DNA of 52,018 bases from Macrostomum lignano (Eukaryota): NCBI GenBank assembly GCA_002269645.1, contig NIVC01004277.1, forward strand, positions 1 to 52,018, in the 5' to 3' direction. This document shows positions 1,146 through 41,004 of the stretch, one piece after another (position 1 is the first letter of the stretch; every line of letters begins with the position of its first letter). The notes below the pieces were generated by a model, which searched no databases, was not told the DNA's origin, and saw only the letters and a program-made list of their open reading frames with translations. The position numbers were made by a program, and so were the translations under genes.

Positions 1146-3043
1146 TCAAGGAGCACTGGGAGGCACACCCAGATACGGAGGTACTGAAGCCTGGGCGCCG
1201 CCAGAAGCGGCAGGATAGGCCGGCGGTGGTGCAGTCGGAGCCGCAGCTCCAGGAGCATAGACTGGACCTGCAGGATAGCCAGGCTGAGGGGCGCCAGGAT
1301 ATCCTGGACCCGATTGAGGCACACCGGGATACGGAGCACCAGGATATTGAGCTCCTCCTGGTTGAGTGCCAGGGTACGGAGCGCTTCCAGGAATTCCGGC
1401 ACCACCAGCAACTAACGGAGCGTCGTTGCGAACTCGAGGCGGACCAGCTCGAATTCCGCGACGCCTCATCCACTCGCACACCTGATTCGGAAGCTCCGCC
1501 AGTACCTCCTTCGCCAAGGCATACCTGCTGCGATCAATGCTGCCACCCTGAATGAAACGACGCAAAGGAACGAATTGGACGACATCTCTTTCGGCGATCA
1601 TCGACCCGCAGCGAAGTCGTTTGTCGTCGGAGTCGAGCTCCTCCATCGCAGAGAAGTCCTCGTCTCCGACACCAACTATGATTATGGACATCGGTAGAGA
1701 TGACGCCTTGATGATTGCCTGCTTCGTCTTCTCGAAGTCCGTGATGATTCCGTCAGTGATGATCAGCAGTACAAAGTACTGAGCTCCTGTCTGGTGAGCC
1801 GCAGCCATTGACGCTACGTGGTTGATCACGGGCGAAAAGTTTGTCGGGCCGTACAGTCGCACCGCTCTGATGCAAGACCGATAGGCCGCGAGAAGACCTG
1901 GCATTCCTGCGCAGTACGGGTTTTCGGGCTGCAGAGTCAGCGAGAACGCATCCTGAACTCCCGAGAACATTGGAGGCAACAGAGCTCCGAAGCCCAGTCC
2001 GGGAAACTGCTTGTCTGAGTCGTAGTCCTGCACAATCTCTCCTACCGAAATTATCGCCAGCTCGTACTGGTTCGGTCGGCCGTCGGCGCTCACGTGGTGC
2101 AGCGAGCGAGGGTCTCTGGGTCTCCGTTGCTGCCCGTGAAGTCGATTGCAACCGTGAAGTGCAGCTCAGTGCCGCCCTGAATGTAGTCGACGAACGAGTC
2201 GATGGTCTCGATTCCGATCTGGCTGAACACGATGGTTCCAGCCGACTTTTTCTTCTTGCTGATGAGGGTTCGTTGGGCGGAGCGGCTCCGGGCGACCTCC
2301 TGCTCCAAGCTCTCCAGACTGCTGTAAAAGCTGCCGATAAAATCGTGCGACCCGTCGCTGTCGTAGTCGTGGCAGTCGAAGCGAAGTAGCAGCTGCCTGT
2401 TTCCGCGGCACAAACGGTTCAGTGGAACCAAAAATTTGGCCCATCGCGGGTTCAAATTGTTCTTGATTACTTCGGTACGATGTACAAGTGTCCAATGTCG
2501 GACTTTATTGACTTCATTTTCACTCGTAATTTCCTCCATTGGCTGATAAATTTCAAGGTAAGGATCGGATTTTCCAAGAAAGTCTTTTTTGTCAAGCTTT
2601 TTTCCTTCGGCAATGAAACTGACTATTTGTTTGCACTCTTGAAGCTCGAAACACGTGATTATAATTGTGGACTTCTTGTGTCCAGTTTTGGACAAAGTAG
2701 TTTCGAATCGACGTCGGCTTACAAGCTCGCCGATCGAAGTCTCCAACTCGCCGAGAAAGTCGTGTTCAGACAGTCGAGCACTCGGACTGTCCAAGTCGTA
2801 AATTTGAAACTTCACCAGCTGACGCTCCTCGAACATGAAGTCGACAATGAACCGATGGCTGAATTCGGGATCAAGCGTGTTGTTCAGCTTTTCAGTTCTG
2901 CCGATTTCTTGAAAATTAGAAGTTCCCGGCTGGCGCAGGAACAGGACGCACTGGGGATCTGACTTGGAGGTGACGTCGCGGTCAGGCAGATTTCTGCAGG
3001 ACACGCTGATCTCAACGCGACTGGTGAGGCTTGGGCCGGACAT
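1146..3043 (-). CDS. CPNE: Copine (C2A-C2B-vWA) with Gly/Pro/Tyr-rich tail, copy 1; intronless CDS, ~632 aa once a 1-bp deletion at 2118-2120 is restored
   Basis: ORFs 2090-3052 and 1146-2093 join into a copine: C2 motifs (SKSDP, LDKKDFLGKSDPY, DYDSDGSHDFIG), AIDFTGSNG, and vWA motifs LLIITDG and SIIIVGVG. ATG at 3043 (MSGPSLTSRVEI) aligns with the copy 2 start (MAAPQLTSRVEI). GGG at 2118-2120 is GGGG in copy 2 (6669-6672). Confidence 0.93.
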
Positions 3044-4191
3044 CAGGAACAAGTTAGTACCGATTAAACTCGATTCGGTTTAATACAGATTACCGCCCGT
3101 GTAATTAGTGTAGCTTTACTTTACTTGCATAGAAAAATGTCACCCTCATAATGCTACAATCGATGAGCAAAGTAAACATCCTGCCCTAAAATAGGTTTGC
3201 TGTTATCGTACTTTACTCGTTCAGGATCTGAAGAATGAGATTATATGCCTATGCAAGAGGCCATTGGCAATGAACTAATCTTAGTAATTACGACCTAGTT
3301 CTAGATTAGGCATGCAAACTTGGCTGAAGTTACTATTTTAGAAAGATTAACTGGAATGTTGTCAAGAAGCAGTAAATGATTTATTAACTAATAATTTTAT
3401 CGTACTTTTGCACAATTCCATAAGGAACAATTTAAATATTTGGAAAATCAGCACTTTTTGAATAAGCGAGATTTTTTTAGGCCTTGATCAAGTAATATAA
3501 CGAAGCAAAAATATAATGAATATACAATTTCATTATTTAGCTTGACGGCAATGTCGGAATAGCAGACGTACCGGTAGGTATTCAAAACCAGTAAATATTA
3601 ATTTCGTGGATACATGATTTAAAAACATACAATTGCGGCAAAATTGGATTGGCAAATAGTAGCAGTATAAATAGAGTGGGAAAAGTATTTTAATTAAAGT
3701 ACAAAACAGTTCACGTCCTATCCATCGGATGCATTAATCCTCTCTTGTGGAAAGCAAAAGCAGAATAACTATTTAGTAACAAGAATTATATTTTCATAAC
3801 TACTGACGCGCAGTACTTTAAATTACGATTTCCAATATCATTCTATAGAAAAATTAATAATTTCGATAATTCCGTCAGACAGTAAATTAGGCCCTTTTAT
3901 TGCCTCTACTAGTAATACAAATTAAAGCCAGCTTAGATCATTAACAGCTAGCAGAAACTCTGCCGATTACAATAGAAAACCAGTTTGAATCTTTTTTAGG
4001 CATCTCAACTTTATGACAATTTGGTTAGGATGCATTCGAGTTGCTGATACTGGCATAGAATTTCTATTCCTTTCAGTGTGGCCATAGATAAGTGAAACAA
4101 GCGGGGAATAATGTATCGGTATTTATTCCCCACTACTCAGGCCTGGCCATAGACTATAGGAATGTATTCCTTCGGCCTGGCGCAATAAAAC

Positions 4192-4889: not shown

Positions 4890-5426
4890 AATGAAACTCC
4901 AATAAATATGTTTCTATAGTCTATGGCCGGGCCCAAGTGGGAAATAATAAACATTATAAGCTAGTATATGCTACTTAAACGCACTATAGTTTAATTTATT
5001 CAGAGGAAAAAGCTGTCTATGGTTGCAACTGAGGGCTTCACCCTCACACCAAATACTGGCCCCACACCGACTGTCGCAATGGCAGTGTGACTTAGGCATA
5101 AATGTCTATGACACCATATTAATAGGATAGCCATAGCAACTCTTGACTCCAAAACAAAATGATAAAAAAATGAAAAAGCCATTAAAAGCTACAAATTCAA
5201 TGCACATGGGTAGGCTGGATGATAAATAAGAGCATTAAAACAATACTGAAAAATCAACGCATCGAATTCCTTTAAACGAAATAAATTAAAGAGTAATTAC
5301 AACAGCAGACGTATTGTTTTTTTAAATGAGGAGATTACAAGACAATTCAAGACAAATAGAGCTAGCCATCAATGTTTTATATCAAATTTATACAGCAGAC
5401 AGCAAGACTCGCAAAAAATCGTCTGT

Positions 5427-7592
5427 TTAAGGAGCACTGGGCTGCGTCCCTCCGGCTACAGAGTAATTTTGAGCCAAGTGGCCATAGCCGGCTTGACGAG
5501 AGCTCACTTGAATACCGGGGTAATTTGCGGCGCCATACTGGCCTGGACCAGTAGGATATCCTCCAACATTTTGATAAGCACCAGGATACCCTGCGCCACC
5601 AGTAGGGCACCAGGATACCCTGCGCCACCCGCATGGGCACCAGGATACCCTGCGCCACCCGTAGGGGCACCAGGATACCCTGCGCCACCCGCATGGGCAC
5701 CAGGATACCCTGCGCCACCCGTAGGGGCACCAGGATACCCTGCGCCACCCGCAGGGGCACCAGGATACCCTGCGCGACCCGCAGGGGCACCAGGATACCC
5801 TGCGCCACCCGCAGGGGCACCAGGATACCCTGCGCCACCCGTAGGGACACCAGGATACCCTGCGCCACCCGTAGGGCACCAGGATAAGAAGGAGCTGAAG
5901 CAGGAGAGCCATCAGTACCTGGTGCGGCAGTAAATGAGGATGGGGCAACAGGGCCTGACGCTGGAACATTTGAATCAGATCGCACTTTAGGCGGACCAGC
6001 TCGAATTCCGCGACGCCTCATCCACTCGCACACCTGATTCGGAAGCTCCGCCAGTACCTCCTTCGCCAAGGCATACCTGCTGCGATCAATGTTGCCACCC
6101 TGAATGAAACGACGCAAAGGAACGAATTGGACGACATCTCTTTCGGCGATCATCGACCGCAACGAAGTCGTTTGTCATCGGAGTCGAGCTCCTCCATCGC
6201 AGAGAAGTCCTCGTCTCCGACACCAACTATGATTATGGACATCGGTAGAGATGACGCCTTGATGATTGCCTGCTTCGTCTTCTCGAAGTCCGTGATGATT
6301 CCGTCAGTGATGATCAGCAGTACAAAGTACTGAGCTCCTGTCTGGTGAGCCGCAGCCATTGACGCTACGTGGTTGATCACGGGCGAAAAGTTTGTCGGGC
6401 CGTACAGTCGCACCGCTCTGATGCAAGACCGATAGGCCGCGAGAAGACCTGGCATTCCTGCGCAGTACGGGTTTTCGGGCTGCAGAGTCAGCGAGAACGC
6501 ATCCTGAACTCCCGAGAACATTGGAGGCAACAGAGCTCCGAAGCCCAGTCCGGGAAACTGCTTGTCTGAGTCGTAGTCCTGCACAATCTCTCCTACCGAA
6601 ATTATCGCCAGCTCGTACTGGTTCGGTCGGCCGTCGGCGCTCACGTGGTGCAGCGAGCGAGGGTCTCTGGGGTCTCCGTTGCTGCCCGTGAAGTCGATTG
6701 CAACCGTGAAGTGCAGCTCAGTGCCGCCCTGAATGTAGTCGACGAACGAGTCGATGGTCTCGATTCCGATCTGGCTGAACACGATGGTTCCAGCCGACTT
6801 TTTCTTCTTGCTGATGAGGGTTCGTTGGGCGGAGCGGCTCCGGGCGACCTCCTGCTCCAAGCTCTCCAGACTGCTGTAAAAGCTGCCGATAAAATCGTGC
6901 GACCCGTCGCTGTCGTAGTCGTGGCAGTCGAAGCGAAGTAGCAGCTGCCTGTTTCCGCGGCACAAACGGTTCAGTGGAATCGAGAATGGAGCCCATTTTG
7001 GGTTTAAATTCTTTTTAATGAATTCGGTTCTGTGCACCAAGACCCAACTGCGAACTCTGGGTACTTCTGATTCAGTTTGTATTTCATCCATCGGCTGATA
7101 AATCTCCAGAAAAGGGTCAGACTTGCCAAAGAAGTCTTTCTTGTCAAGTTTGACGCCTTCGACGCGAAAATTGGCAATTAGTTTGCACTCCTGAAGCTCC
7201 AAGCAGGTCAGTATAATGAGAGATTTTTTTGTACTGCCAGTCTTGGTCAAAGCCGCCTCGTACTGTCGCCGACTGACAAGTTCACCAACAGTGGTCTCAA
7301 GTTCGCCTAAAAAGTCATGGTCCTGCAGGGCTGCGCGCGAGCTGTCAACATCGTAGAGCCGAAAAATGACTACCTGTCTTTCCTCGAAGCAGAAGTCTAC
7401 TTGAAACTTGTGATTGAATTGCGGGTTTAGGGTGTTCTGTATGCATTCAGTGCGACCAAATTCATGCGTTGATGTTGGCGTTTTCATGAACAGGACACAC
7501 ATTGGATCAGATTTGGACATGACATCACGATCTGGCAAGTTCTTGCAAGAGACAATGATCTCCACCCTGCTAGTGAGCTGAGGAGCTGCCAT
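5427..7592 (-). CDS. CPNE: Copine copy 2 with (GAPxGGAGYP)x10 tail; intronless CDS, ~722 aa once three 1-bp deletions (6157-6158, ~5876, ~5605) are restored
   Basis: ORF 6150-7592 covers C2A, C2B and most of vWA. It continues in the 5377-6162 frame (SMIAERDVVQFVP), passes through the 30-bp repeat and ends QPSAP* at 5427, matching the copy 1 ending PPSAP*. CC at 6157-6158 is CCC in copy 1 (1605-1607). Confidence 0.92.
5582..5886 (-). repeat. Coding 30-bp minisatellite, 10 units (GAPTGGAGYP-type), in the copine 2 tail
   Basis: Units CAGGATACCCTGCGCCACCCGyAGGGGCAC start at 5582, 5611, 5641 ... 5851. The first and last units are 29 nt. Confidence 0.95.
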
Positions 7593-12078: not shown

Positions 12079-12564
12079 CAGCTGTCTCTTTGTATCCTAG
12101 GCTGCTGGATCCCACGTCTAAGAGGAGACAAAAGTTAGGTTTGGATTAAGTTTTAAGACAGGTCCAGGTTAGGGCTCAGTTTTAGGTTAGGCCATTATGA
12201 TGTAGGATAAACTAATTTTAGGGTTAGGTTCGACAGCCAACCGTTGTATAGACGCAGTTTTATCCTAAATAACTTTGGTTAAAACCGATCCCGAAGCAAT
12301 CGACAAAATCAAGACAAGTGTTTAACGCGTGTGGTATGCTGTGCAAAGGGCGTCCAATGTTTTAACTTTGCACTCATATCTTTTTATTTATTCTGAGATT
12401 GACTACTAAATTAGACTCAATTATACTCTAAATCTGATGATAAATAGTTGATTGTTGGCATTCAGATTTTTTAGCATCTATTTATCCGACAAATAGTTCG
12501 TATTGTCGTTTGCCACAGTTCCAAGCTCTTTAAATAATTAGTCGCTCTTAACAATAATAACATT

Positions 12565-13115
12565 TCATTCGTTTTCAAACACCACGGCCTCGGCGCAGTA
12601 GCCGCTGAGGTAGCGGACGGTGCAGGTCCGGCAGCAGCACCTCTGCACCAGGTTGTCTGTGTTAAGTCTGCACCTCAGCTTCAACAAAGAGACGCTCTTC
12701 TTCATTCTCTCGCTGCCTGAAACAACAGATCAATTGGTGAAACGCTTACTGTGTCTCTGTATTCTGACTTTTAATAAAAGCTGCATGGTTTCAATGCAAC
12801 ACGACTCTCACTGAGTATCTCTCGAGTCCTCTTTGCGGTGCGGAACCTGCCGTAGCTGTTGTACATCCTGCCGTCGCAGACTTTAGCCACGGCGTCGATT
12901 AGTTCGCGGCCGCAGAAGTTGACAACCGTGTTCTGCGGGTAATAGACAGATTAATGTGCTAATAGCATTATTGACGGTAGCGTTTGGCACGATAAAAGTA
13001 CTTTGTACGAGCTCACCGGATTTTTCTCGTCGAAATCCAAATAGTTATAGGAAGCGAGAAGACCACTGAAACAGCTGAGCAGGATAACTGCGAACAGTAC
13101 ATTTGCAAATTGCAT
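12565..13115 (-). CDS. ilp: Insulin-like peptide precursor, 3 exons (13115-13017, 12932-12812, 12716-12565), 123 aa
   Basis: Hand-spliced with GTGAG...CAG introns of 84 and 95 bp and matching phases (0, 1): MQFANVLFAVILLSCFSGLLA-SYNYLDFDEKNPNTVVNFCGRELIDAVAKVCDGRMYNSYGRFRTAKR-TREILSSERMKK-SVSLLKLRCRLNTDNLVQRCCCRTCTVRYLSGYCAEAVVFENE*. Shows a signal peptide, B-chain CGxxL C-x11-C, A-chain CC-x3-C-x8-C, and dibasic sites KR and KK. Confidence 0.9.
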
Positions 13116-13367
13116 GGCGACTAGTTGGGAGAATAGGATTTTTAAAATAAAAATTGGCAAGGAGTGGCGCTTGCTTGTCTGCAGTTATTAACGAGCAGCC
13201 TTCAACGGACGCAGGATTTTGAGGCAATGAGATTTCGGCTTACATTTTATTGATTTTATAGACTTTGCGAAGCCAAGGTGATTGGAGGGCTCATGGAAAA
13301 CCAATTGAATATAACAAATACTACTGTTTGCCATCGACATTCCTATAGTAGTCAATGAAAAATTACC

Positions 13368-14317
13368 CATTCATTCTGCTGCAATCAAGTCATTCATTCT
13401 GCTGCAATCAAGTCATTCACTCTGTTGCAATCAAGTCATTCACTCTGTTGCAATCAAGTCATTCACTCTGCTGCAATCAAGTCATTCAATCTGCTGAAAT
13501 CAAATCATTCACTCTGTTGCAATCAAGTCATTCATTCTGCTGCAATCAAGTCATTCACTCTACTGCAATCAAGTCATTCACTTTGCTGCAATCAAGTCAT
13601 TCATTCTGCTGCAATCAAATCATTCACTCTGTTGCAATCAAGTCATTCATTCTGCTGCAATCAAATCATTCACTCTGTTGCAATCAAGTCATTCACTCTG
13701 CTGCAATCAAATCATTCACTCTGTTGCAATCAAGTCATTCATTCTGCTGCAATCAAGTCATTCACTTTGCTGCAATCAAGTCATTCATTCTGCTGCAATC
13801 AAGTCATTCATTCTGTTGCAATCAAGTCATTCACTCTGTTGCAATCAAGTCATTCACTCTGCTGCAATCAAGTCATTCATTCTGTTGCAATCAAGTCATT
13901 CACTCTGCTGCAATCAAGTCATTCACTCTGCTGCAATCAAGTCATTCACTTTGCTGCAATCAAGTCATTCATTCTGCTGCAATCAAATCATTCACTCTGT
14001 TGCAATCAAGTCATTCATTCTGCTGCAATCAAATCATTCACTCTGTTGCAATCAAGTCATTCACTCTGCTGCAATCAAATCATTCACTCTGTTGCAATCA
14101 AGTCATTCATTCTGCTGCAATCAAGTCATTCACTTTGCTGCAATCAAGTCATTCATTCTGCTGCAATCAAGTCATTCATTCTGTTGCAATCAAGTCATTC
14201 ACTCTGTTGCAATCAAGTCATTCACTCTGCTGCAATCAAATCATTCACTCTGTTGCAATCAAGTCATTCACTCTGCTGCAATCAAGTCATTCACTCTGCT
14301 GCAATCAAGTCATTCAC
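13368..14317. repeat. 23-bp minisatellite (GCTGCAATCAAGTCATTCACTCT), ~41 units
   Basis: Direct reading. It explains the long spurious ORFs at 13355-14928. Confidence 0.95.
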
Positions 14318-14887
14318 AAAGCAACAATCAACCGTTCACAAAACAGCAATTTACCACTCACAAAGCAATCATCCAAAATTCACAAAGCAACCATCCAATA
14401 TTCACAGAGCAACCATCCAACATTCACAGAGCACCAATTTACTATTCACAAAGCAACCATCCAACATTCACAGAGCACCAATCTACCATTCACAAAGCAA
14501 TCATCCAACATTCACAGAGAACCAATCTACCATTCACAAAGCAACCATCCAACATTCACAGAGCACCAATTTACTATTCACAAAGCAACCATCCAACATT
14601 CACAGAGAACCAATCTACCATGCATTCACAAAGCAACCATCCAACATTCACAGAGCACCAATCTACCATGCATTCACAAAGCAACCATCCAACATTCACA
14701 GAGCACCAATCTACCATGCATTCACAAAGCAACCATCCAACATTCACAGAGCACCAATCTACCATTCACAAAGCAATCATCCAACATTCACAGAGAACCA
14801 ATCTACCATTCACAAAGCAATCATCCAACATTCACAGAGCACCAATCTACCATGCATTCACAAAGCAACCATCCAACATTCACAAAG
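14311..14887. repeat. 22-bp two-subunit minisatellite (ATTCACAAAGCAACCATCCAAC / ATTCACAGAGCACCAATCTACC, some with extra ATGC)
   Basis: Alternating 22-mers forming 44/48-bp dimers, contiguous with the 23-bp array. Confidence 0.9.
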
Positions 14888-15016
14888 TAATTAACAATCA
14901 AAGCAGGGTGAATGTCAGTTTTAGATAATTTTTACGAGCTCATCATGTGATTGATATGCGAGTAATATGAAATTATTGATGGTTTTAGTGTGAAAGGAGG
15001 ACTGTTACGGAGCAAG

Positions 15017-15190
15017 TCGTGAATGGCAGATCCCTTAGTTGTGAATGGTAGATTGCTAAGTTGTGAATGGCAGATCCCTAAGTTGTGAATGGCAGACTGC
15101 TAAGTTGTTAATGGCTGATCCTTTTTAAGTTGTGATTGGAAGATCGTAAAGTGGTGAATGGTATATTGCTAAGTTGTGAATGGCAGATAG
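15017..15190. repeat. Degenerate 22-bp minisatellite (AGTTGTGAATGGCAGATyCyTA), inverted relative of the 14311-14887 array
   Basis: About 8 units. 15039-15055 is the exact reverse complement of 14479-14495. Confidence 0.8.
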
Positions 15191-15578
15191 ATAGAGAACA
15201 GTTAATGTGAATAGCTGATCGTGAATGGAAGAACCAAATACTATTATTAGCGTGCTTTTTCTGATATTTGTTTTGCTTTGGTTACAGAGACAAATTTGGC
15301 AGTGCGCTCAAGCTGGATCAGCGATCCAAAGATTTCCTCGGCATTAACTTCTTTGCAGACACGCAGCGGGCGTTGTGTTGCAGAAACTGACGTTTGATTG
15401 CTTTGAGCAATTTTAGACAAACTTCGTGCCAGAGAAATCTGGAAAAATAGCTGAGCTTTTCTGTCGACAGGTGTCCCCTGTCAGGCCTTTAAAATTGCAC
15501 AGCTGACTGAGCAGCGTCTCAACTCAGGAAATAAATTTCAATTGACGTGCAGCGAAAACTCTCCACCCACGATTTTTG

Positions 15579-16912
<1,334 letters not shown>

Positions 16913-17721
16913 CATCTTGTGCACTGTATAACTTGCCTAGCAGTGTTTACAGGGTGATGGTTTGCTGAGTCTGGGCTTAAGAAAGCTCTCCATCAAATTT
17001 CGACTCCGAGATACGAAGTAGTTGAGCTCGCGAAATGTGTGCATTCATATACTTAGGATATTGTTAGCAAAGTCCAACTAGGTCGAACAAACAAAGTCTG
17101 ACAAGCAAAGTCCATTCAACCGCCTCCTACAAGAAAATACTTGCCTAGAGTACTAAAAGATAATTCAAAATGCAAAGTCATCTAAGCGCGGTACGCAGTG
17201 CTTGTGCTTATTTCTGGTTCAATTTCGTTTCATCGTCTTGTTTATTTGCTGGAAGCAAGAAGGAGCCGCATCAAAGGCAAAAAAGTACAATTTTCAGCCC
17301 TCTATTTAAAAGAAAATTAGGCCTAATTAGTGAAGTATCCTTTGTTGCATTAGCTAATATGAGCAACATGCTACTTTAATATTGTCTAGCGCAAAAGTGA
17401 GAATAGCTGCATACATATTATAGGTGCCTTATTACTGTTAAAAAACTAGCTATACGAAATGTCCAACCTTGCAAGTGAAATATACATTATCTATTAGTGC
17501 AAACTGGGAATCAATTCAGAGGCCACATGCTATGGCGACGCATGCCGCACTCACAAAGGTGTCAAATTAGCCATATAAATTTGTGCAGCGCAATGCCAAC
17601 GGATGAGCTAACAGAAATGGTCTATCTTAATTTAAGTTTTCATTTCATAAAAAAGAGACGCGTACGTTCAAAAAAACATGATGCAAAACTCGGGACACAG
17701 TACTAATTGTCCAGTCTGTCA

Positions 17722-26204
<8,483 letters not shown>

Positions 26205-26962: not shown

Positions 26963-27430
<468 letters not shown>

Positions 27431-37674: not shown

Positions 37675-40600
37675 CACATACATACATGTACACCGCCGCA
37701 AAAGAAAGCAAAAGGAAAAGGGGGCAGCACGGGACGGAAGAGCAAAAAAAAGGGGGAAAAGAAACGGAAATGTGAGAGCGTGGCGGCAGTGTCAGAGCAC
37801 TCTCCTTCTGGCTTGCTCCCTGAAGGCAGCCGCAGCGTTGGTCTGGCCGATGACACCGGCATCAGCCAGCAGGCAGTCCACGTACCGGCGCGTCCTGGCC
37901 TGCCCTCGGCGCCAGGGGCCCCGCAGCGTGAGCAGCAGGACGTCCTGCACCGGTTCAGGGCAGTAGGTTTCCGCGCGGATCACGTGGCCCGCCAGCTGCA
38001 GCCGCCGCCGCCGGATGGTCTCGCTGGGTGGTCGCAGGCCGGCTCGTCGGTAGAGGGCCGCGTTCGAGACCACCTCAGGGTAGGAGATGCCGAAGGCCGC
38101 GCGCAGCAGGCTGGAGTGGGCCGCGTCCAGCCGCTTCTCCAGCGTCTCGGTCAGCGTCCACGTCTCGGCGTTGTAAGTCAGGACGGTCTCGACCACCGCC
38201 TGAAACAGCCGAGACCTCAGGCGATCTGGCAGCGCGGCGCTCTGCAGAACAACCCGGACTGAGCGGAAGGCCGCCCAAGCCAGGCCTCTGCGTCGCGCCA
38301 GGTCCTCCTGAACGCTGGGCACCAGACCGCCGAGGTACGTGAAGCGCGTGCAGCGGGGTAGAGGGGCCGCGTGACCGTCTGCGCCGCGGCAGGTGATATT
38401 GGCAGGCAGCTCCGCTGGCACCGTCAGGACCTCCGTCTTGTCGGTGTTGACAACCAGGCCGACCGTAGCCGCTATCGCCACCAGGCTGTCCAGCATCCGC
38501 TGGGCTCCATCCGCCGTGGAGGCCAGCAGCGCCAGGTCGTCGGCATAGCCCAGCAGCGACAGTCTCTTCTCTGGATGGTGGCTGCTCGTGCGCCTGCACA
38601 GCATGAAGCCGTCGGCGTCGGATGGAAGCGCAGTCCGCAGCACCCAGTCGAGGACCAGCACGAACAAGAAGGGCGCTAGCGTGTCGCCCTGCAGCACTCC
38701 AGATGTTGTACTGAATGGGTCCGACAGCCCGTCGGGCGTCACCACGGCGGCTTGAGTGTCCTGGTAGAGCGCCATGACTGCGCTGACCAGGCGCTGGGGC
38801 ACGTGGTAAGCCCGGAGCACCGGCACAAGGGCGCCGCGCGCCACCGAGTCGAACGCCTTTCTGAAGTCAACGAAGACACAGATCAGCGTCGCCTGGCGGG
38901 TGCGCGCCTCCTCGATTGTCCTCCTGAGGGCAAGGATCTGGGTCGCTGTGCCCCGGTGTGGCCGGAAGCCGTTCTGCTCGTGCCGCAGAAACGGGTCCAG
39001 CACCGGTTGCAGCCGCGTCAGCAGGATCTTGTTGAAGAGCTTCGCGGCGCAAGACATCAGCGAGATGCCCCTATGTTCTTCTTTCCGAGTTGTGCCGGGC
39101 TTCTTTGGGATGGGGATCATGTGGGCCGTCGTCCACTCAGTTGGGGCTGCACCCCCGTCAAGTACGCGGTTCATCACACCGGCGACCGCACGGGCCACCG
39201 GCAGGACTCGCAGCGCCTCGACAGGGATCTCATCCGGGCCGGCCGCTTTTCCACCAGGGGACTTCTTCGCCTGCAGCACCACCTCGTCCAGAGTAATGGG
39301 GCTGACGTCGAAATCCTCCTCCTTGGGCAGGGCCACTTCCGGCGGCAGCGGCATCTCCGCCTGCAGCACCGGCGGCGGCGCGTTCACGATGGCGCCGAAA
39401 AAGTCCCGCAGCTCGTTCCGGCGGGCCTCCGCCGTGTCGCCGGGGAGGTTGAGGCTCGTGCGGCTCTTCCTCCCGGTCAGCGCGTTCACAGCGCTCCACA
39501 CGGCGCGGCGCTTGCCGTCGTGCCCTGCCGTTGTCACCGTCCTGATGGTCTCTTCTACGGCGGCCTGTTGTCCTTGCTCATAGGCGGCTGCGAGGGCCGC
39601 CTCGGCTTCGTCCACCTCCGCAGTCCTGCCCGCCCGTCGCAGCTGCTCAAGCCTCAGCCTCGCACTTTGCACTTCCGGGTCCACCTCCCAGACCGGCCGA
39701 CCTTTCTGCAGGGGCTTCACCAACGGTAGGGTCCACTCCGCAGCAGATTGGACGGCCGTGCAGATCTCGGGGTAGTCGGCTTCCTTCTTGCCGTCGAGGG
39801 CATCCACAAACGCGCGGGCGAAGTGAACCTGGGTCGCATCGTCACGCAGAGCCCGGAAGAAGTGCTTCGGCTTCCGCTTGGGCGGCCGGTAGAGCGGGTC
39901 CTTCAGCTTGATGTCGCAGAAGAGCAGCTTGTGGTCGGACTTCGGCGCCAATGGCAAGATGGTATCGCAGTTGGTCACACGGCCACGCTCTCGAAAGTGC
40001 AGCAGCACGTGGTCCAGCTGCGCCAGCCTCGTCGTGGCATTCCGGCGGCGGTTGTTGTTGCGCCGCGGCCGCTTGCAGCCGGCAAAGGTTGCCAGCCGCT
40101 GCTCGGGTTTCCGGAACCACGTGTTCATCGACACCATGTCATGCCGAGCCACGAAGTCGGTCAGCGCCTCGGTGTTGGCATTCTCGCGCGGGGTCACGAA
40201 GGGGGCCCGGTCTGACCTGCGCATGACAGCGTTCAGATCACCGAGCACGATCACCGTGTCCCGTTGTGCCACAGCCTCCACCTGCCCGGACAAGAACTCG
40301 AAAAAGACACGAGCTTCATCGGGGTGGGCAGCTGTCGGCGCGTAGGCGCAGAAAATGTGGGCGCTCCGACTCCTCAGCCGCAGGTCGATCCGCAGCAGCC
40401 GAGGGGACAGGCTCTGGCAGCACACACTCTGTTGCAGCTTTGGCCCGACCAGCACTCCTACTCCTCCATGACCTCTCTCGTCCGCTGATGTGTACAGGAG
40501 GCTCCAGCCAGCTCCCAGCTCTTCACGCTGGAGGCCGGGGCCGGCCACGATAGACACCTCCTGCAGAGCCACCAGGTCCATCTTCGTCTCCTGAGCCAGC

Positions 40601-41004
40601 TTTGCCAGCAGGCCCTGGCGCCAGTTCTCCTTGAGGGTCCGGCAGTTCCAGGTTGCCAGCCAAAGGGGGTGCTCTGGTACGGCTGGGGCCCGATGCTGTT
40701 GGGCCTCGTGGTCCCCGGCGCCACCCGGAGGATCCAGGGCCTCGGCCTCCCGCCTGCCTGCGCGCTTTGCTGCTCCATGGGCACGACTGCGCCGGTTGCG
40801 CTCTCTGCGCCGCTGGGTGCGGCGGGCAGCACTGCGCTGGCCGCGGGGGGTCTTGGCCTTGCCGCTGTTGGCTGCCGCAGCTTGAGGGCGCGGCACTCCG
40901 AGCCAACCTTGGCTATGCTCCGGGGCGATGCTCTGCCCAGGGGTGCCAGGAGGTCGCGGCATATTTATACGCCAGGGGCGTATAAATAAGATGGCTCTTA
41001 TTTA
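37675..41004 (-). mobile_element. Full-length RTE-clade non-LTR retrotransposon
   Basis: Single APE+RT ORF. 13-bp TSD TCTCTCATAAGTA at 37662-37674 and 41005-41017 (16 bp with one mismatch). The 3' end is a short (TATG)n tandem tail rather than poly(A). Much more GC-rich than the flanks. Confidence 0.93.
37792..40962 (-). CDS. RTE ORF, 1056 aa: Arg-rich N-terminus, apurinic-type endonuclease, reverse transcriptase
   Basis: EN motifs TWNCRTL, LQEV, VLGDLNA, LDHV, SDH. RT motifs HEQNGFR, FVDFRKAFDSV, GVLQGDTLAPFLF, YADD, FTYLG, then LTYNAETWTL and RRLQLAGHVIR. No stops or frameshifts. Confidence 0.96.
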   Translation of the reverse strand: MPRPPGTPGQSIAPEHSQGWLGVPRPQAAAANSGKAKTPRGQRSAARRTQRRRERNRRSRAHGAAKRAGRREAEALDPPGGAGDHEAQQHRAPAVPEHPLWLATWNCRTLKENWRQGLLAKLAQETKMDLVALQEVSIVAGPGLQREELGAGWSLLYTSADERGHGGVGVLVGPKLQQSVCCQSLSPRLLRIDLRLRSRSAHIFCAYAPTAAHPDEARVFFEFLSGQVEAVAQRDTVIVLGDLNAVMRRSDRAPFVTPRENANTEALTDFVARHDMVSMNTWFRKPEQRLATFAGCKRPRRNNNRRRNATTRLAQLDHVLLHFRERGRVTNCDTILPLAPKSDHKLLFCDIKLKDPLYRPPKRKPKHFFRALRDDATQVHFARAFVDALDGKKEADYPEICTAVQSAAEWTLPLVKPLQKGRPVWEVDPEVQSARLRLEQLRRAGRTAEVDEAEAALAAAYEQGQQAAVEETIRTVTTAGHDGKRRAVWSAVNALTGRKSRTSLNLPGDTAEARRNELRDFFGAIVNAPPPVLQAEMPLPPEVALPKEEDFDVSPITLDEVVLQAKKSPGGKAAGPDEIPVEALRVLPVARAVAGVMNRVLDGGAAPTEWTTAHMIPIPKKPGTTRKEEHRGISLMSCAAKLFNKILLTRLQPVLDPFLRHEQNGFRPHRGTATQILALRRTIEEARTRQATLICVFVDFRKAFDSVARGALVPVLRAYHVPQRLVSAVMALYQDTQAAVVTPDGLSDPFSTTSGVLQGDTLAPFLFVLVLDWVLRTALPSDADGFMLCRRTSSHHPEKRLSLLGYADDLALLASTADGAQRMLDSLVAIAATVGLVVNTDKTEVLTVPAELPANITCRGADGHAAPLPRCTRFTYLGGLVPSVQEDLARRRGLAWAAFRSVRVVLQSAALPDRLRSRLFQAVVETVLTYNAETWTLTETLEKRLDAAHSSLLRAAFGISYPEVVSNAALYRRAGLRPPSETIRRRRLQLAGHVIRAETYCPEPVQDVLLLTLRGPWRRGQARTRRYVDCLLADAGVIGQTNAAAAFREQARRRVL

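What the first reader, a model, noticed from the sequence alone, without database searches (positions are those of the whole stretch)
12565..13115. Hidden three-exon insulin-like peptide gene missed by the ORF track
Seen: three small exons with GTGAG/CAG boundaries splice in phase into a 123-aa precursor with a signal peptide, B-chain FCGRELIDAVAKVC, KR and KK sites, and A-chain CC-x3-C-x8-C. Known: this is the insulin/IGF/relaxin family signature. Inference: an invertebrate ILP small and fragmented enough to be missed by automated annotation. It sits between two minisatellites, ~250 bp from a 1.5-kb satellite block.
Basis: partly seen in the sequence, partly recalled or inferred. Interest (0 to 1): 0.8.

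Follow-up and report, generated by a model that had tools for sequence, protein, structure and literature searches.

The report
Annotated flatworm insulin-like peptide gene
The three-exon gene is real and does encode an insulin-like peptide of the flatworm Macrostomum lignano, but it is not hidden: GenBank and UniProt already hold exactly this 123-residue protein, and UniProt labels it with an insulin domain.

Summary
On the minus strand, exons 13115-13017, 12932-12812 and 12716-12565 join through GT..AG introns of 84 and 95 nt into a 372-nt reading frame. It encodes a 123-aa precursor with a hydrophobic signal peptide, a B-chain C-x11-C, KR and KK sites, and an A-chain CC-x3-C-x8-C. Pfam Insulin (PF00049) matches at 34.8 bits (cut-off 23, E 3.3e-8).

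The "missed by annotation" claim fails. The window is the whole contig NIVC01004277.1 of the Macrostomum lignano Mlig_3_7 assembly. The spliced protein is residue-for-residue PAA47963.1 (BOX15_Mlig020476g4, "hypothetical protein") and UniProt A0A1I8FTC6 ("IlGF domain-containing protein"), annotated at exactly 12565-13115. That annotation was built from RNA-seq assemblies, so the junctions already rest on transcript evidence.

Three more near-identical copies lie on other contigs in the same ATPase–ILP–copine order, as expected for this recently duplicated genome.

Most likely it is a secreted prohormone cut at KR and KK into two chains, signalling through an insulin-receptor-type kinase (inferred). 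Its one unusual trait is an extra cysteine pair (C89 and C102, position A8) in an N-terminally extended A chain. No paper on this gene was found. The flanking minisatellites are ordinary for this contig. Low interest.

The parts
13255..13260 (-). TATAAA box, about 30-36 nt upstream of the 5'-most transcript-derived position
   Evidence: Script scan. The partial transcript-derived models of the sister copies (P0001, P0004) begin at the position equivalent to window 13224. Its role as a promoter is inferred.
13116..13224 (-). 5' UTR (at least 109 nt) with Kozak-like GTCGCCATGC
   Evidence: The sister-copy transcript models read through this stretch. Frameshifting indels between copies here, and an in-frame TAA at 13187-13185 in this copy, show that it is non-coding.
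13017..13115 (-). Exon 1 CDS (99 nt): signal peptide (about aa 1-21, 13115-13053) and the start of the B-chain N-terminal extension
   Evidence: The hydropathy peak of 2.5-3.1 over residues 3-9 and the sharp fall after residue 21 come. The exact cleavage site is not predicted, because no SignalP was available.
12933..13016 (-). Intron 1, 84 nt, GT..AG, phase 0
   Evidence: The boundaries are identical in all four copies. Reading through it hits a stop codon.
12812..12932 (-). Exon 2 (121 nt): B domain with C40-x11-C52 (B domain ends at 12834), KR 67-68 (12833-12828), first part of the C-peptide
12717..12811 (-). Intron 2, 95 nt, GT..AG, phase 1, inside the C-peptide
12565..12716 (-). Exon 3 CDS (152 nt): rest of the C-peptide (to 12703), KK 79-80 (12702-12697), extended A domain S81-E123 (12696-12568) with C89, C100, C101, C102, C105 and C114, and stop TGA (12567-12565)
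12383..12564 (-). 3' UTR up to two overlapping AATAAA signals (12392-12387 and 12388-12383)
   Evidence: The stretch is conserved in all four copies. The poly(A) site itself was not observed here.

Best explanation
This is a genuine, transcribed and already annotated insulin-like peptide (ILP) gene of the free-living flatworm Macrostomum lignano. It is Mlig020476.g4, one of four near-identical copies in a recently duplicated genome.

Shown here: a TATA-box-like motif, a 5' UTR, three exons, GT..AG introns and AATAAA signals. The product is a 123-aa prepropeptide with a hydrophobic signal sequence and B-C-A domain order. It carries the six canonical insulin cysteines and the conserved core residues (Gly B8, Leu B11, Ile B12, Val B18, Leu A2, Val A3, Leu A16, Tyr A19).

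Inferred steps:
- The signal peptide is removed near residue 21.
- The insulin fold forms with disulfides C40-C101 (B7-A7), C52-C114 (B19-A20) and C100-C105 (A6-A11). A fourth bridge forms between the two extra cysteines C89 and C102 (A8).
- Prohormone convertases cut after KR68 and KK80, and a carboxypeptidase trims the basic residues. This releases a 10-residue C-peptide (TREILSSERM) and leaves a large two-chain hormone: a B chain of about residues 22-66, and an A chain of residues 81-123 with a 14-residue N-terminal extension and a 9-residue tail after the last Cys.
- The hormone activates an insulin/IGF-receptor-type tyrosine kinase and the PI3K-Akt-FoxO/TOR pathway, coupling feeding to growth, stem-cell (neoblast) division and gonad size. 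Planarian ilp-1 is reported to do this.
For: - Splicing and translation.
- Family: Pfam PF00049 Insulin scores 34.8 bits against a cut-off of 23, E 3.3e-8, covering residues 39-114 and model positions 3-81 of 81.
- Solved structures by sequence: single-chain insulin E 9.7e-5 over residues 38-114, and IGF-1 E 5.9e-4, with every canonical Cys and core residue aligned.
- Existing annotation: the exact protein is PAA47963.1 and UniProt A0A1I8FTC6, on a 52,018-bp contig. The gene is called at window 12565-13115 on NIVC01004277.1 with a Pfam Insulin hit.
- Transcript support: the GenBank annotation of this assembly derives from RNA-seq (StringTie/TACO plus a de novo transcriptome, with ORFs from TransDecoder) (PMC5730564).
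- Copies: four syntenic copies keep the reading frame and all splice sites. There are only 4 variable CDS sites (2 synonymous, 2 not). The CDS is less diverged than the introns: 3/372 against 6/175, Fisher p = 0.03.
- Signals: hydrophobic N-terminus; TATA box, Kozak context and AATAAA.
- Structure: the AlphaFold model places helices at 42-52, 96-102 and 107-122, where the B, A1 and A2 helices of insulin lie. The top eight Foldseek PDB hits are all insulin or IGF.
- Receptor: an IGF-receptor-like EST (ANGU5871) is expressed in M. lignano gonads.
- Function: a review cites Miller & Newmark 2012 for planarian insulin signalling in maintaining neoblast division.
Against: - I did not inspect RNA-seq reads. 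Transcript support is indirect, through the annotation method.
- No peptide, processing or receptor data exist for this protein, so cleavage at KK (a weaker site than KR) and the disulfide map are inferences.
- The structure model has low confidence (mean pLDDT 47.5), and no Foldseek hit is significant (best E 0.16).
- The four copies are too similar for a firm selection test.
- Outside M. lignano the nearest detectable relative is a spider ILP at 31% identity. Orthology to any characterised ILP, including planarian ilp-1, is therefore untested.
Confidence: 0.85

Rival explanations
1. It is an IGF-like single-chain growth factor. The KR and KK sites are not cut, and the protein is secreted as one chain of about 100 residues with a short C domain and a D-domain-like tail. 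It still acts on the insulin/IGF-receptor kinase.
For: - The B domain CGRELIDAVAKVC matches IGF-1 CGAELVDALQFVC closely, and CCCRTC..YCA matches IGF-1 CCFRSC..YCA (alignments).
- There is no dibasic site directly before the A1-equivalent residue (N95). Human proinsulin KR aligns to T93-D94.
- Nine residues follow the last Cys, as in the IGF D domain.
- The extra Cys89 lies in what would be the C domain and could pin it to position A8.
Against: - Two good convertase motifs are present: K67-R68 (with R70 following) and R77-x-K79-K80.
- They bracket a stretch without cysteines, the classic prohormone layout.
- The best whole-length match in the PDB is proinsulin-like rather than IGF.
Confidence: 0.25
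2. It is a relaxin-like or DILP8-like peptide that signals through a leucine-rich-repeat GPCR rather than a receptor tyrosine kinase.
For: The B-chain start CGREL is the same as I recall for human relaxin-2 (own knowledge, not tested with a tool here). Pfam PF00049 covers insulin, IGF and relaxin together.
Against: - The relaxin receptor-binding cassette R-x-x-x-R-x-x-I/V in the B helix is not met. The sequence reads R42-E-L-I-D46-A-V-A49.
- No relaxin or INSL chain is among the 37 PDB sequence matches with E up to 10, which are dominated by insulin and IGF, with DILP2, bombyxin and a few unrelated chance hits.
Confidence: 0.06
3. It is a chance set of ORFs or a decaying pseudogene next to satellite DNA, not a functional gene.
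For: The region is rich in repeats. ILPs are short, and cysteine patterns can arise by chance.
Against: - Pfam E 3.3e-8, above the curated cut-off.
- The A-chain motif occurs only once in 52 kb across six frames.
- The transcript-based annotation has identical exon boundaries.
- All four copies keep the frame and splice sites, while indels occur in the introns and the 5' UTR.
Confidence: 0.02
4. One reading: a previously unannotated ILP gene, overlooked because it is small and split.
For: A prokaryote-style ORF list does break it into pieces. GenBank names it only 'hypothetical protein'.
Against: - The exact 123-aa product is deposited in GenBank (PAA47963.1) and in UniProt (A0A1I8FTC6, 'IlGF domain-containing protein'). 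The sister copies are deposited too.
- The gene is called at the same coordinates on this contig.
Confidence: 0.01

Closest known systems
GenBank PAA47963.1 (BOX15_Mlig020476g4) = UniProt A0A1I8FTC6, Macrostomum lignano
   Same: Identical 123-aa sequence, on the same 52,018-bp contig NIVC01004277.1, at the same coordinates 12565-13115. It is the same gene.
   Different: Nothing differs in sequence. GenBank's name is uninformative ('hypothetical protein'), while UniProt's name gives only the domain. The searchable library holds no functional study.
Sister copies Mlig020476.g1/g2/g3 (PAA69610.1, PAA61239.1, PAA58647.1) on contigs NIVC01001308.1, NIVC01002056.1 and NIVC01002351.1
   Same: 98-99% identical proteins with the same exon-intron structure. 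The order P-type ATPase – ILP – copine is seen on three contigs; on the fourth (g2) the contig ends just upstream of the ILP. The flanking minisatellites are shared where sequence is available.
   Different: The window copy alone has S81 where the others have N81, which forms an N-x-S sequon there. g3 has D27N, two synonymous changes and a 4-nt intron deletion. The g2 and g3 models are annotated as 5'-partial because their 5' UTR stays open in frame.
Vertebrate insulin, proinsulin and IGF-1 (PDB 6pxv, 1b9g, 1bqt)
   Same: B-C-A order, six canonical cysteines, conserved core residues, and dibasic sites around a connecting peptide. A phase-1 intron lies inside the C-peptide, as I recall for vertebrate insulin-family genes (own knowledge).
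   Different: Roughly 25-30% identity. There are two extra cysteines (C89 and C102 = A8). The B chain carries an 18-residue N-terminal extension, and the A chain a 14-residue N-terminal extension with no dibasic site directly before A1. A 9-residue tail follows the last Cys, and the C-peptide is only 10 residues.
Spider ILP 'bombyxin B-2 homolog isoform X2', Uloborus diversus (P0008)
   Same: It is the only non-Macrostomum ILP reaching E < 0.001 in an exhaustive phmmer scan: 31% identity over residues 11-115. It shares CG..L..A...CDGR.Y in the B chain, KR after the B chain, and CC...CT...L..YCA in the A chain.
   Different: It has six cysteines only, a KR directly before the A chain, and no C-terminal tail. 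It comes from a distant phylum, so the similarity reflects family conservation rather than orthology.
Planarian Smed-ilp-1 (Miller & Newmark 2012) and the ILPs of parasitic flatworms (Wang et al. 2014)
   Same: They are ILPs from the same phylum. A review cites the 2012 paper for planarian insulin signalling in maintaining neoblast division during starvation. This is the functional model adopted here.
   Different: None was similar enough to appear in the protein searches. Orthology and a shared cysteine pattern are untested.
Four-disulfide invertebrate ILPs: molluscan MIPs and nematode beta-type insulins (Pfam PF03488)
   Same: Eight cysteines in the propeptide. PF03488 gives a borderline hit of 21.6 bits against a cut-off of 21.
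   Different: The PF03488 match covers only residues 39-55, the B helix (model positions 3-18 of 48). In those groups, as I recall, the extra bridge links the B and A chains. Here both extra cysteines lie on the A-chain side (C89 and C102), and the B domain has only two.

Membership tests
Insulin/IGF/relaxin superfamily (Pfam PF00049) | Profile-HMM match above the curated gathering score | tested here: met
   34.8 bits against a cut-off of 23, E 3.3e-8, residues 39-114 on model positions 3-81 of 81. A precomputed PF00049 hit is also on record for the database entry.
Insulin/IGF/relaxin superfamily (Pfam PF00049) | Six canonical cysteines: B chain C-x11-C and A chain CC-x3-C-x8-C | tested here: met
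   C40-x11-C52 and C100-C101-x3-C105-x8-C114. They align cysteine for cysteine with human insulin and IGF-1.
Insulin/IGF/relaxin superfamily (Pfam PF00049) | Secretory signal peptide at the N-terminus | tested here: met
   Residues 3-21 are strongly hydrophobic (9-residue Kyte-Doolittle windows up to 3.1), followed by a polar stretch. No dedicated predictor such as SignalP was available, so the cleavage site is not fixed.
Insulin/IGF/relaxin superfamily (Pfam PF00049) | B-C-A precursor with basic processing sites flanking a cysteine-free connecting peptide | tested here: met
   KR 67-68 and KK 79-80 bracket TREILSSERM. Actual cleavage cannot be tested with these tools.
Insulin/IGF/relaxin superfamily (Pfam PF00049) | Insulin fold: B helix plus two A helices held by three disulfides | tested here: inconclusive
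   AlphaFold puts helices at 42-52, 96-102 and 107-122, but mean pLDDT is 47.5. The top eight Foldseek PDB hits are all insulin or IGF, but the best E is 0.16.
Insulin/IGF/relaxin superfamily (Pfam PF00049) | The gene is expressed and spliced as modelled | tested here: met
   This is indirect. The deposited gene model with identical boundaries comes from an RNA-seq-derived transcriptome annotation. I did not inspect the reads.
Relaxin subfamily | B-helix receptor-binding cassette R-x-x-x-R-x-x-I/V | tested here: not met
   The sequence reads R42-E-L-I-D46-A-V-A49. The cassette definition is from my own knowledge.
IGF type (single chain) | C domain is not excised (no usable dibasic sites) and a D-domain extension follows the last Cys | tested here: inconclusive
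   A 9-residue tail is present and no dibasic site directly precedes A1. However, KR and KK sites exist in the connecting region. Processing cannot be tested here.
Nematode beta-type insulin (Pfam PF03488) | Full-length profile match and the beta-type fourth disulfide between the B and A chains | tested here: not met
   21.6 bits against a cut-off of 21, but only residues 39-55 on model positions 3-18 of 48. The B domain has no third cysteine.
Ligand of an insulin-receptor tyrosine kinase | Binds and activates the species' insulin/IGF receptor homologue | not testable with these tools
   The only context available is an IGF-receptor-like EST (ANGU5871) that exists and is expressed in M. lignano gonads.

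The most novel reading that the evidence does not exclude
The Macrostomum ILP may represent a distinct four-disulfide architecture. The fourth bridge would lie entirely on the A-chain side, from C89 in a 14-residue N-terminal A-chain extension to C102 at position A8. It would be combined with a very short 10-residue C-peptide and an IGF-like tail. That would make it a structural intermediate between two-chain insulins and single-chain IGFs, in an early-branching flatworm lineage.
Probability: 0.3. Interest if true: 0.3.

Novelty: already known. Interest (0 to 1): 0.12.

Why it matters
As a discovery it matters little. The gene, its exact product and its insulin-domain assignment are already in GenBank and UniProt, and ILPs are expected in every bilaterian.

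It has modest practical value. M. lignano is a transgenic, RNAi-amenable model for stem cells, regeneration and ageing. No paper on this gene was found. This report gives a clean gene model (promoter, UTRs, exons, predicted chains) and the copy count (four near-identical copies, which one RNAi probe would hit together).

The extra A-side cysteine pair is a small structural curiosity, worth a disulfide-mapping experiment if the peptide is ever made.

Tried and rejected
- **Exhaustive phmmer scan** against 1.84 billion representatives, plus two word-indexed searches with the single sequence and a two-sequence profile. They returned only the M. lignano copies, one spider ILP, and a repetitive 1006-aa protein (P0007) that I regard as spurious. 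No other flatworm ILP was reachable, so the ILP subclass, orthology, and conservation of C89/C102 could not be tested.
- **AlphaFold** with the shallow 7-sequence alignment gave mean pLDDT 47.5. Foldseek against the PDB gave only non-significant hits, although they were uniformly insulin or IGF. I use these as weak consistency only.
- **Selection test across the four copies.** Only 4 variable CDS sites exist. The CDS-versus-intron contrast has p = 0.03-0.04, which is suggestive but underpowered.
- **Pfam Ins_beta** was borderline and covered only the B helix. I rejected it as a classification.
- **Literature.** No paper mentions Mlig020476 or an M. lignano ILP. The 2007 'insulin-like' in situ probe with gonad expression turned out to be an IGF-receptor-like EST, not this gene. 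The Miller & Newmark 2012 and Wang et al. 2014 papers are not held. A search for a paper documenting the phase-1 C-peptide intron found nothing, so that comparison rests on my own knowledge.
- **Second ILP in the window.** None was found by tblastn or a motif scan.
- **Special role for the flanking satellites.** Rejected, because about 20 arrays are spread across the contig.

Full report
**What is in the sequence.** I read the minus strand of 12300-13400 and spliced the three proposed exons by script.
- Exon 1 is 13115-13017 (99 nt), exon 2 is 12932-12812 (121 nt), and exon 3 is 12716-12565 (152 nt, including TGA).
- The introns are 84 nt (GTGAGC...CCGCAG, phase 0) and 95 nt (GTGAGA...TTTCAG, phase 1).
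- The joined reading frame is 372 nt and encodes 123 residues: MQFANVLFAVILLSCFSGLLASYNYLDFDEKNPNTVVNFCGRELIDAVAKVCDGRMYNSYGRFRTAKRTREILSSERMKKSVSLLKLRCRLNTDNLVQRCCCRTCTVRYLSGYCAEAVVFENE.

A bacterial-style ORF list breaks the gene into pieces of 69, 39 and 46 aa, which is why an ORF track does not show it. The A-chain pattern CC-x3-C-x8-C occurs once in the six-frame translation of the whole 52 kb, and it is here. tblastn finds no second copy in the window.

**Family assignment.** Pfam's Insulin model (PF00049) matches residues 39-114 over nearly its full length (positions 3-81 of 81). The score is 34.8 bits against a gathering score of 23, with E 3.3e-8. Against the sequences of all solved structures, the best matches are single-chain or pro-insulin (E 9.7e-5, residues 38-114), IGF-1 (E 5.9e-4) and IGF-2. 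DILP2 and bombyxin A chains appear further down.

In those alignments all six canonical cysteines line up. So do the core positions: Gly B8, Leu B11, Ile for Val B12, Val B18, Leu for Ile A2, Val A3, Leu A16 and Tyr A19. The N-terminus is strongly hydrophobic from about residue 3 to 21 and then turns polar, as a signal peptide should.

**Where the window comes from, and whether the gene is hidden.** The first protein search returned a 99%-identical Macrostomum lignano protein. The cluster look-up shows that the exact 123-aa sequence is GenBank PAA47963.1, 'hypothetical protein BOX15_Mlig020476g4', seen on one contig of 52,018 bp. It is also UniProt A0A1I8FTC6, 'IlGF domain-containing protein'.

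The contig look-up identifies the window as NIVC01004277.1 of assembly GCA_002269645.1 (Mlig_3_7). The gene is therefore not missed by annotation.

The assembly paper (PMC5730564) states that the GenBank annotation was made from a genome-guided transcriptome. It used StringTie and TACO on RNA-seq plus a de novo assembly, with ORFs called by TransDecoder. The splice junctions therefore already rest on transcript evidence, although I did not see reads myself.

**Gene anatomy beyond the CDS**.
- A TATAAA box lies at 13260-13255.
- The transcript-derived, 5'-open models of two sister copies start at the position equivalent to 13224, about 30-36 nt downstream of that box.
- The start codon has the context GTCGCCATGC.
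- Upstream of it the copies differ by frameshifting indels, and this copy has an in-frame TAA at 13187-13185. The stretch is therefore 5' UTR, and the ATG at 13115 is the start.
- Two overlapping AATAAA signals lie at 12392-12383, about 175 nt after the stop.

**Copies.** Three further copies (g1, g2, g3) lie on contigs of 162.5, 142.5 and 181.8 kb. The order P-type cation ATPase – ILP – copine is seen on three contigs; on g2's contig the sequence ends just upstream of the ILP. The 23-bp and 20-bp arrays flank the gene wherever sequence is available.
- All four copies keep the 372-nt frame and GT/AG at both introns.
- The variable CDS sites are TGT/TGC at codon 15, GCA/GCC at codon 66, D27N in g3, and S81 in the window copy against N81 in the other three.
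- Against the most diverged copy, the CDS differs at 3-4 of 372 sites. The introns differ at 6-7 of 175 sites plus a 4-nt deletion. Fisher p is 0.03-0.04, which is weak but in the direction of constraint.
[quoted passage not shown] Four copies are therefore the expected state, not a local expansion.

An older UniProt model (A0A1I8FSC5, P0002) wrongly fuses the ATPase C-terminus to ILP exon 2 and a truncated exon 3.

**How it most likely works.** The domain order, cysteines and basic sites are shown. The rest is inferred from established knowledge of prohormone processing and insulin signalling.
- After signal-peptide removal the propeptide folds with C40-C101, C52-C114 and C100-C105.
- The two remaining cysteines are C89 and C102. 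C102 is the residue equivalent to A8, at the end of the first A helix. C89 lies six residues before A1. Their most economical fate is a fourth disulfide with each other.
- KR67-68 (followed by T-R70) and R77-M-K79-K80 are convertase-type motifs bracketing the cysteine-free TREILSSERM.
- Cutting both sites gives a B chain of about 45 residues and an A chain of 43 residues. The A chain keeps a 14-residue N-terminal extension, because human proinsulin's KR before A1 aligns to T93-D94 here. It also keeps a 9-residue tail.
- The alternative is that it stays single-chain like IGF. Its B and A domains do resemble IGF-1.
- The relaxin reading is disfavoured, because the R-x-x-x-R-x-x-I/V cassette is not met (R42...D46...A49).
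- The presumed receptor is an insulin/IGF-receptor kinase. An IGF-receptor-like EST is expressed in M. lignano gonads.
- A review cites Miller & Newmark 2012 for planarian insulin signalling in maintaining neoblast division. I take that as the functional model. None of this function was tested.

**Limits.**
- AlphaFold with a 7-row alignment gave pLDDT 47.5. The helices fall where insulin's B, A1 and A2 helices lie.
- The top eight Foldseek PDB hits are all insulin or IGF, but none is significant.
- An exhaustive phmmer scan of 1.84 billion representatives found only the M. lignano copies and one other ILP, a spider 'bombyxin B-2 homolog' at 31% identity. Neither orthology nor conservation of the extra cysteine pair could be examined.
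- No paper in the library names this gene.

**Context.** The 1.52-kb block of 23-bp and 22/44-bp arrays starts 253 bp upstream of the ATG, and a 568-bp 20-bp minisatellite ends 475 bp past the stop. Tandem arrays occur roughly every 2.6 kb along the contig, so this says nothing particular about the ILP gene.

**Verdict.** The 'hidden gene' claim is refuted. This is an already known sequence and family assignment with no functional study. The only unusual feature is the A-side extra cysteine pair. Interest is low.

Noticed in passing
window 13368-14887: A 1.52-kb block of two adjoining tandem arrays (23-bp unit x41, then 22/44-bp unit) lies about 110 bp upstream of the ILP TATA box. It is stop-free in three frames, so it produces spurious 416-511-aa 'ORFs' (13355-14890 and others). 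The 23-bp array is present at the sister loci where upstream sequence exists.
   Followed up: partly
window 15579-16917, 18210-18917 and 26963-27430: Very long, pure microsatellites: (TCTA) x335 at 99% match, (CAGA)n over 708 bp, and (AGAC) x117. The first also generates about 470-aa artefactual ORFs.
   Followed up: no
window 37792-40962 (-): An intact 1056-aa ORF carries an endonuclease/exonuclease/phosphatase domain and a reverse transcriptase (Pfam PF03372 and PF00078). It looks like a full-length ORF2 of a non-LTR (LINE-type) retrotransposon, in a patch of 66% G+C that stands out from the 45% average.
   Followed up: partly
window 1146-3052 (-) and 6150-7592 (-): Two tandem copine genes (C2 + Copine domains) lie downstream of the ILP. 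Two copines are also called at two of the sister loci.
   Followed up: partly
window about 18960-26200 (-): A multi-exon P-type cation ATPase (Cation_ATPase_N, E1-E2, Cation_ATPase, Hydrolase and Cation_ATPase_C domains; 1008-aa product in the annotation) lies upstream of the ILP. Several minisatellites sit inside its introns (21137-21334, 23140-23475, 24546-25311).
   Followed up: partly
UniProt A0A1I8FSC5 (P0002), equivalent to window about 12565-19000: An older automated model fuses the C-terminal part of the ATPase to ILP exon 2 and a truncated exon 3, dropping Cys89. It is a chimeric mis-prediction sitting beside the correct 123-aa model.
   Followed up: partly
window 12696-12694 (codon 81): The window copy has Ser81 (AGC) directly after the KK site. 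The other three copies have Asn81 (AAC), which creates an N-V-S glycosylation sequon at the predicted first residue of the A chain.
   Followed up: no
window 5578-5886: A 30-bp tandem array (x10, 94% match, G+C-rich) lies within long ORFs on both strands (5377-6162), next to the copine gene. It may be a coding proline/glycine-rich repeat or just another minisatellite.
   Followed up: no
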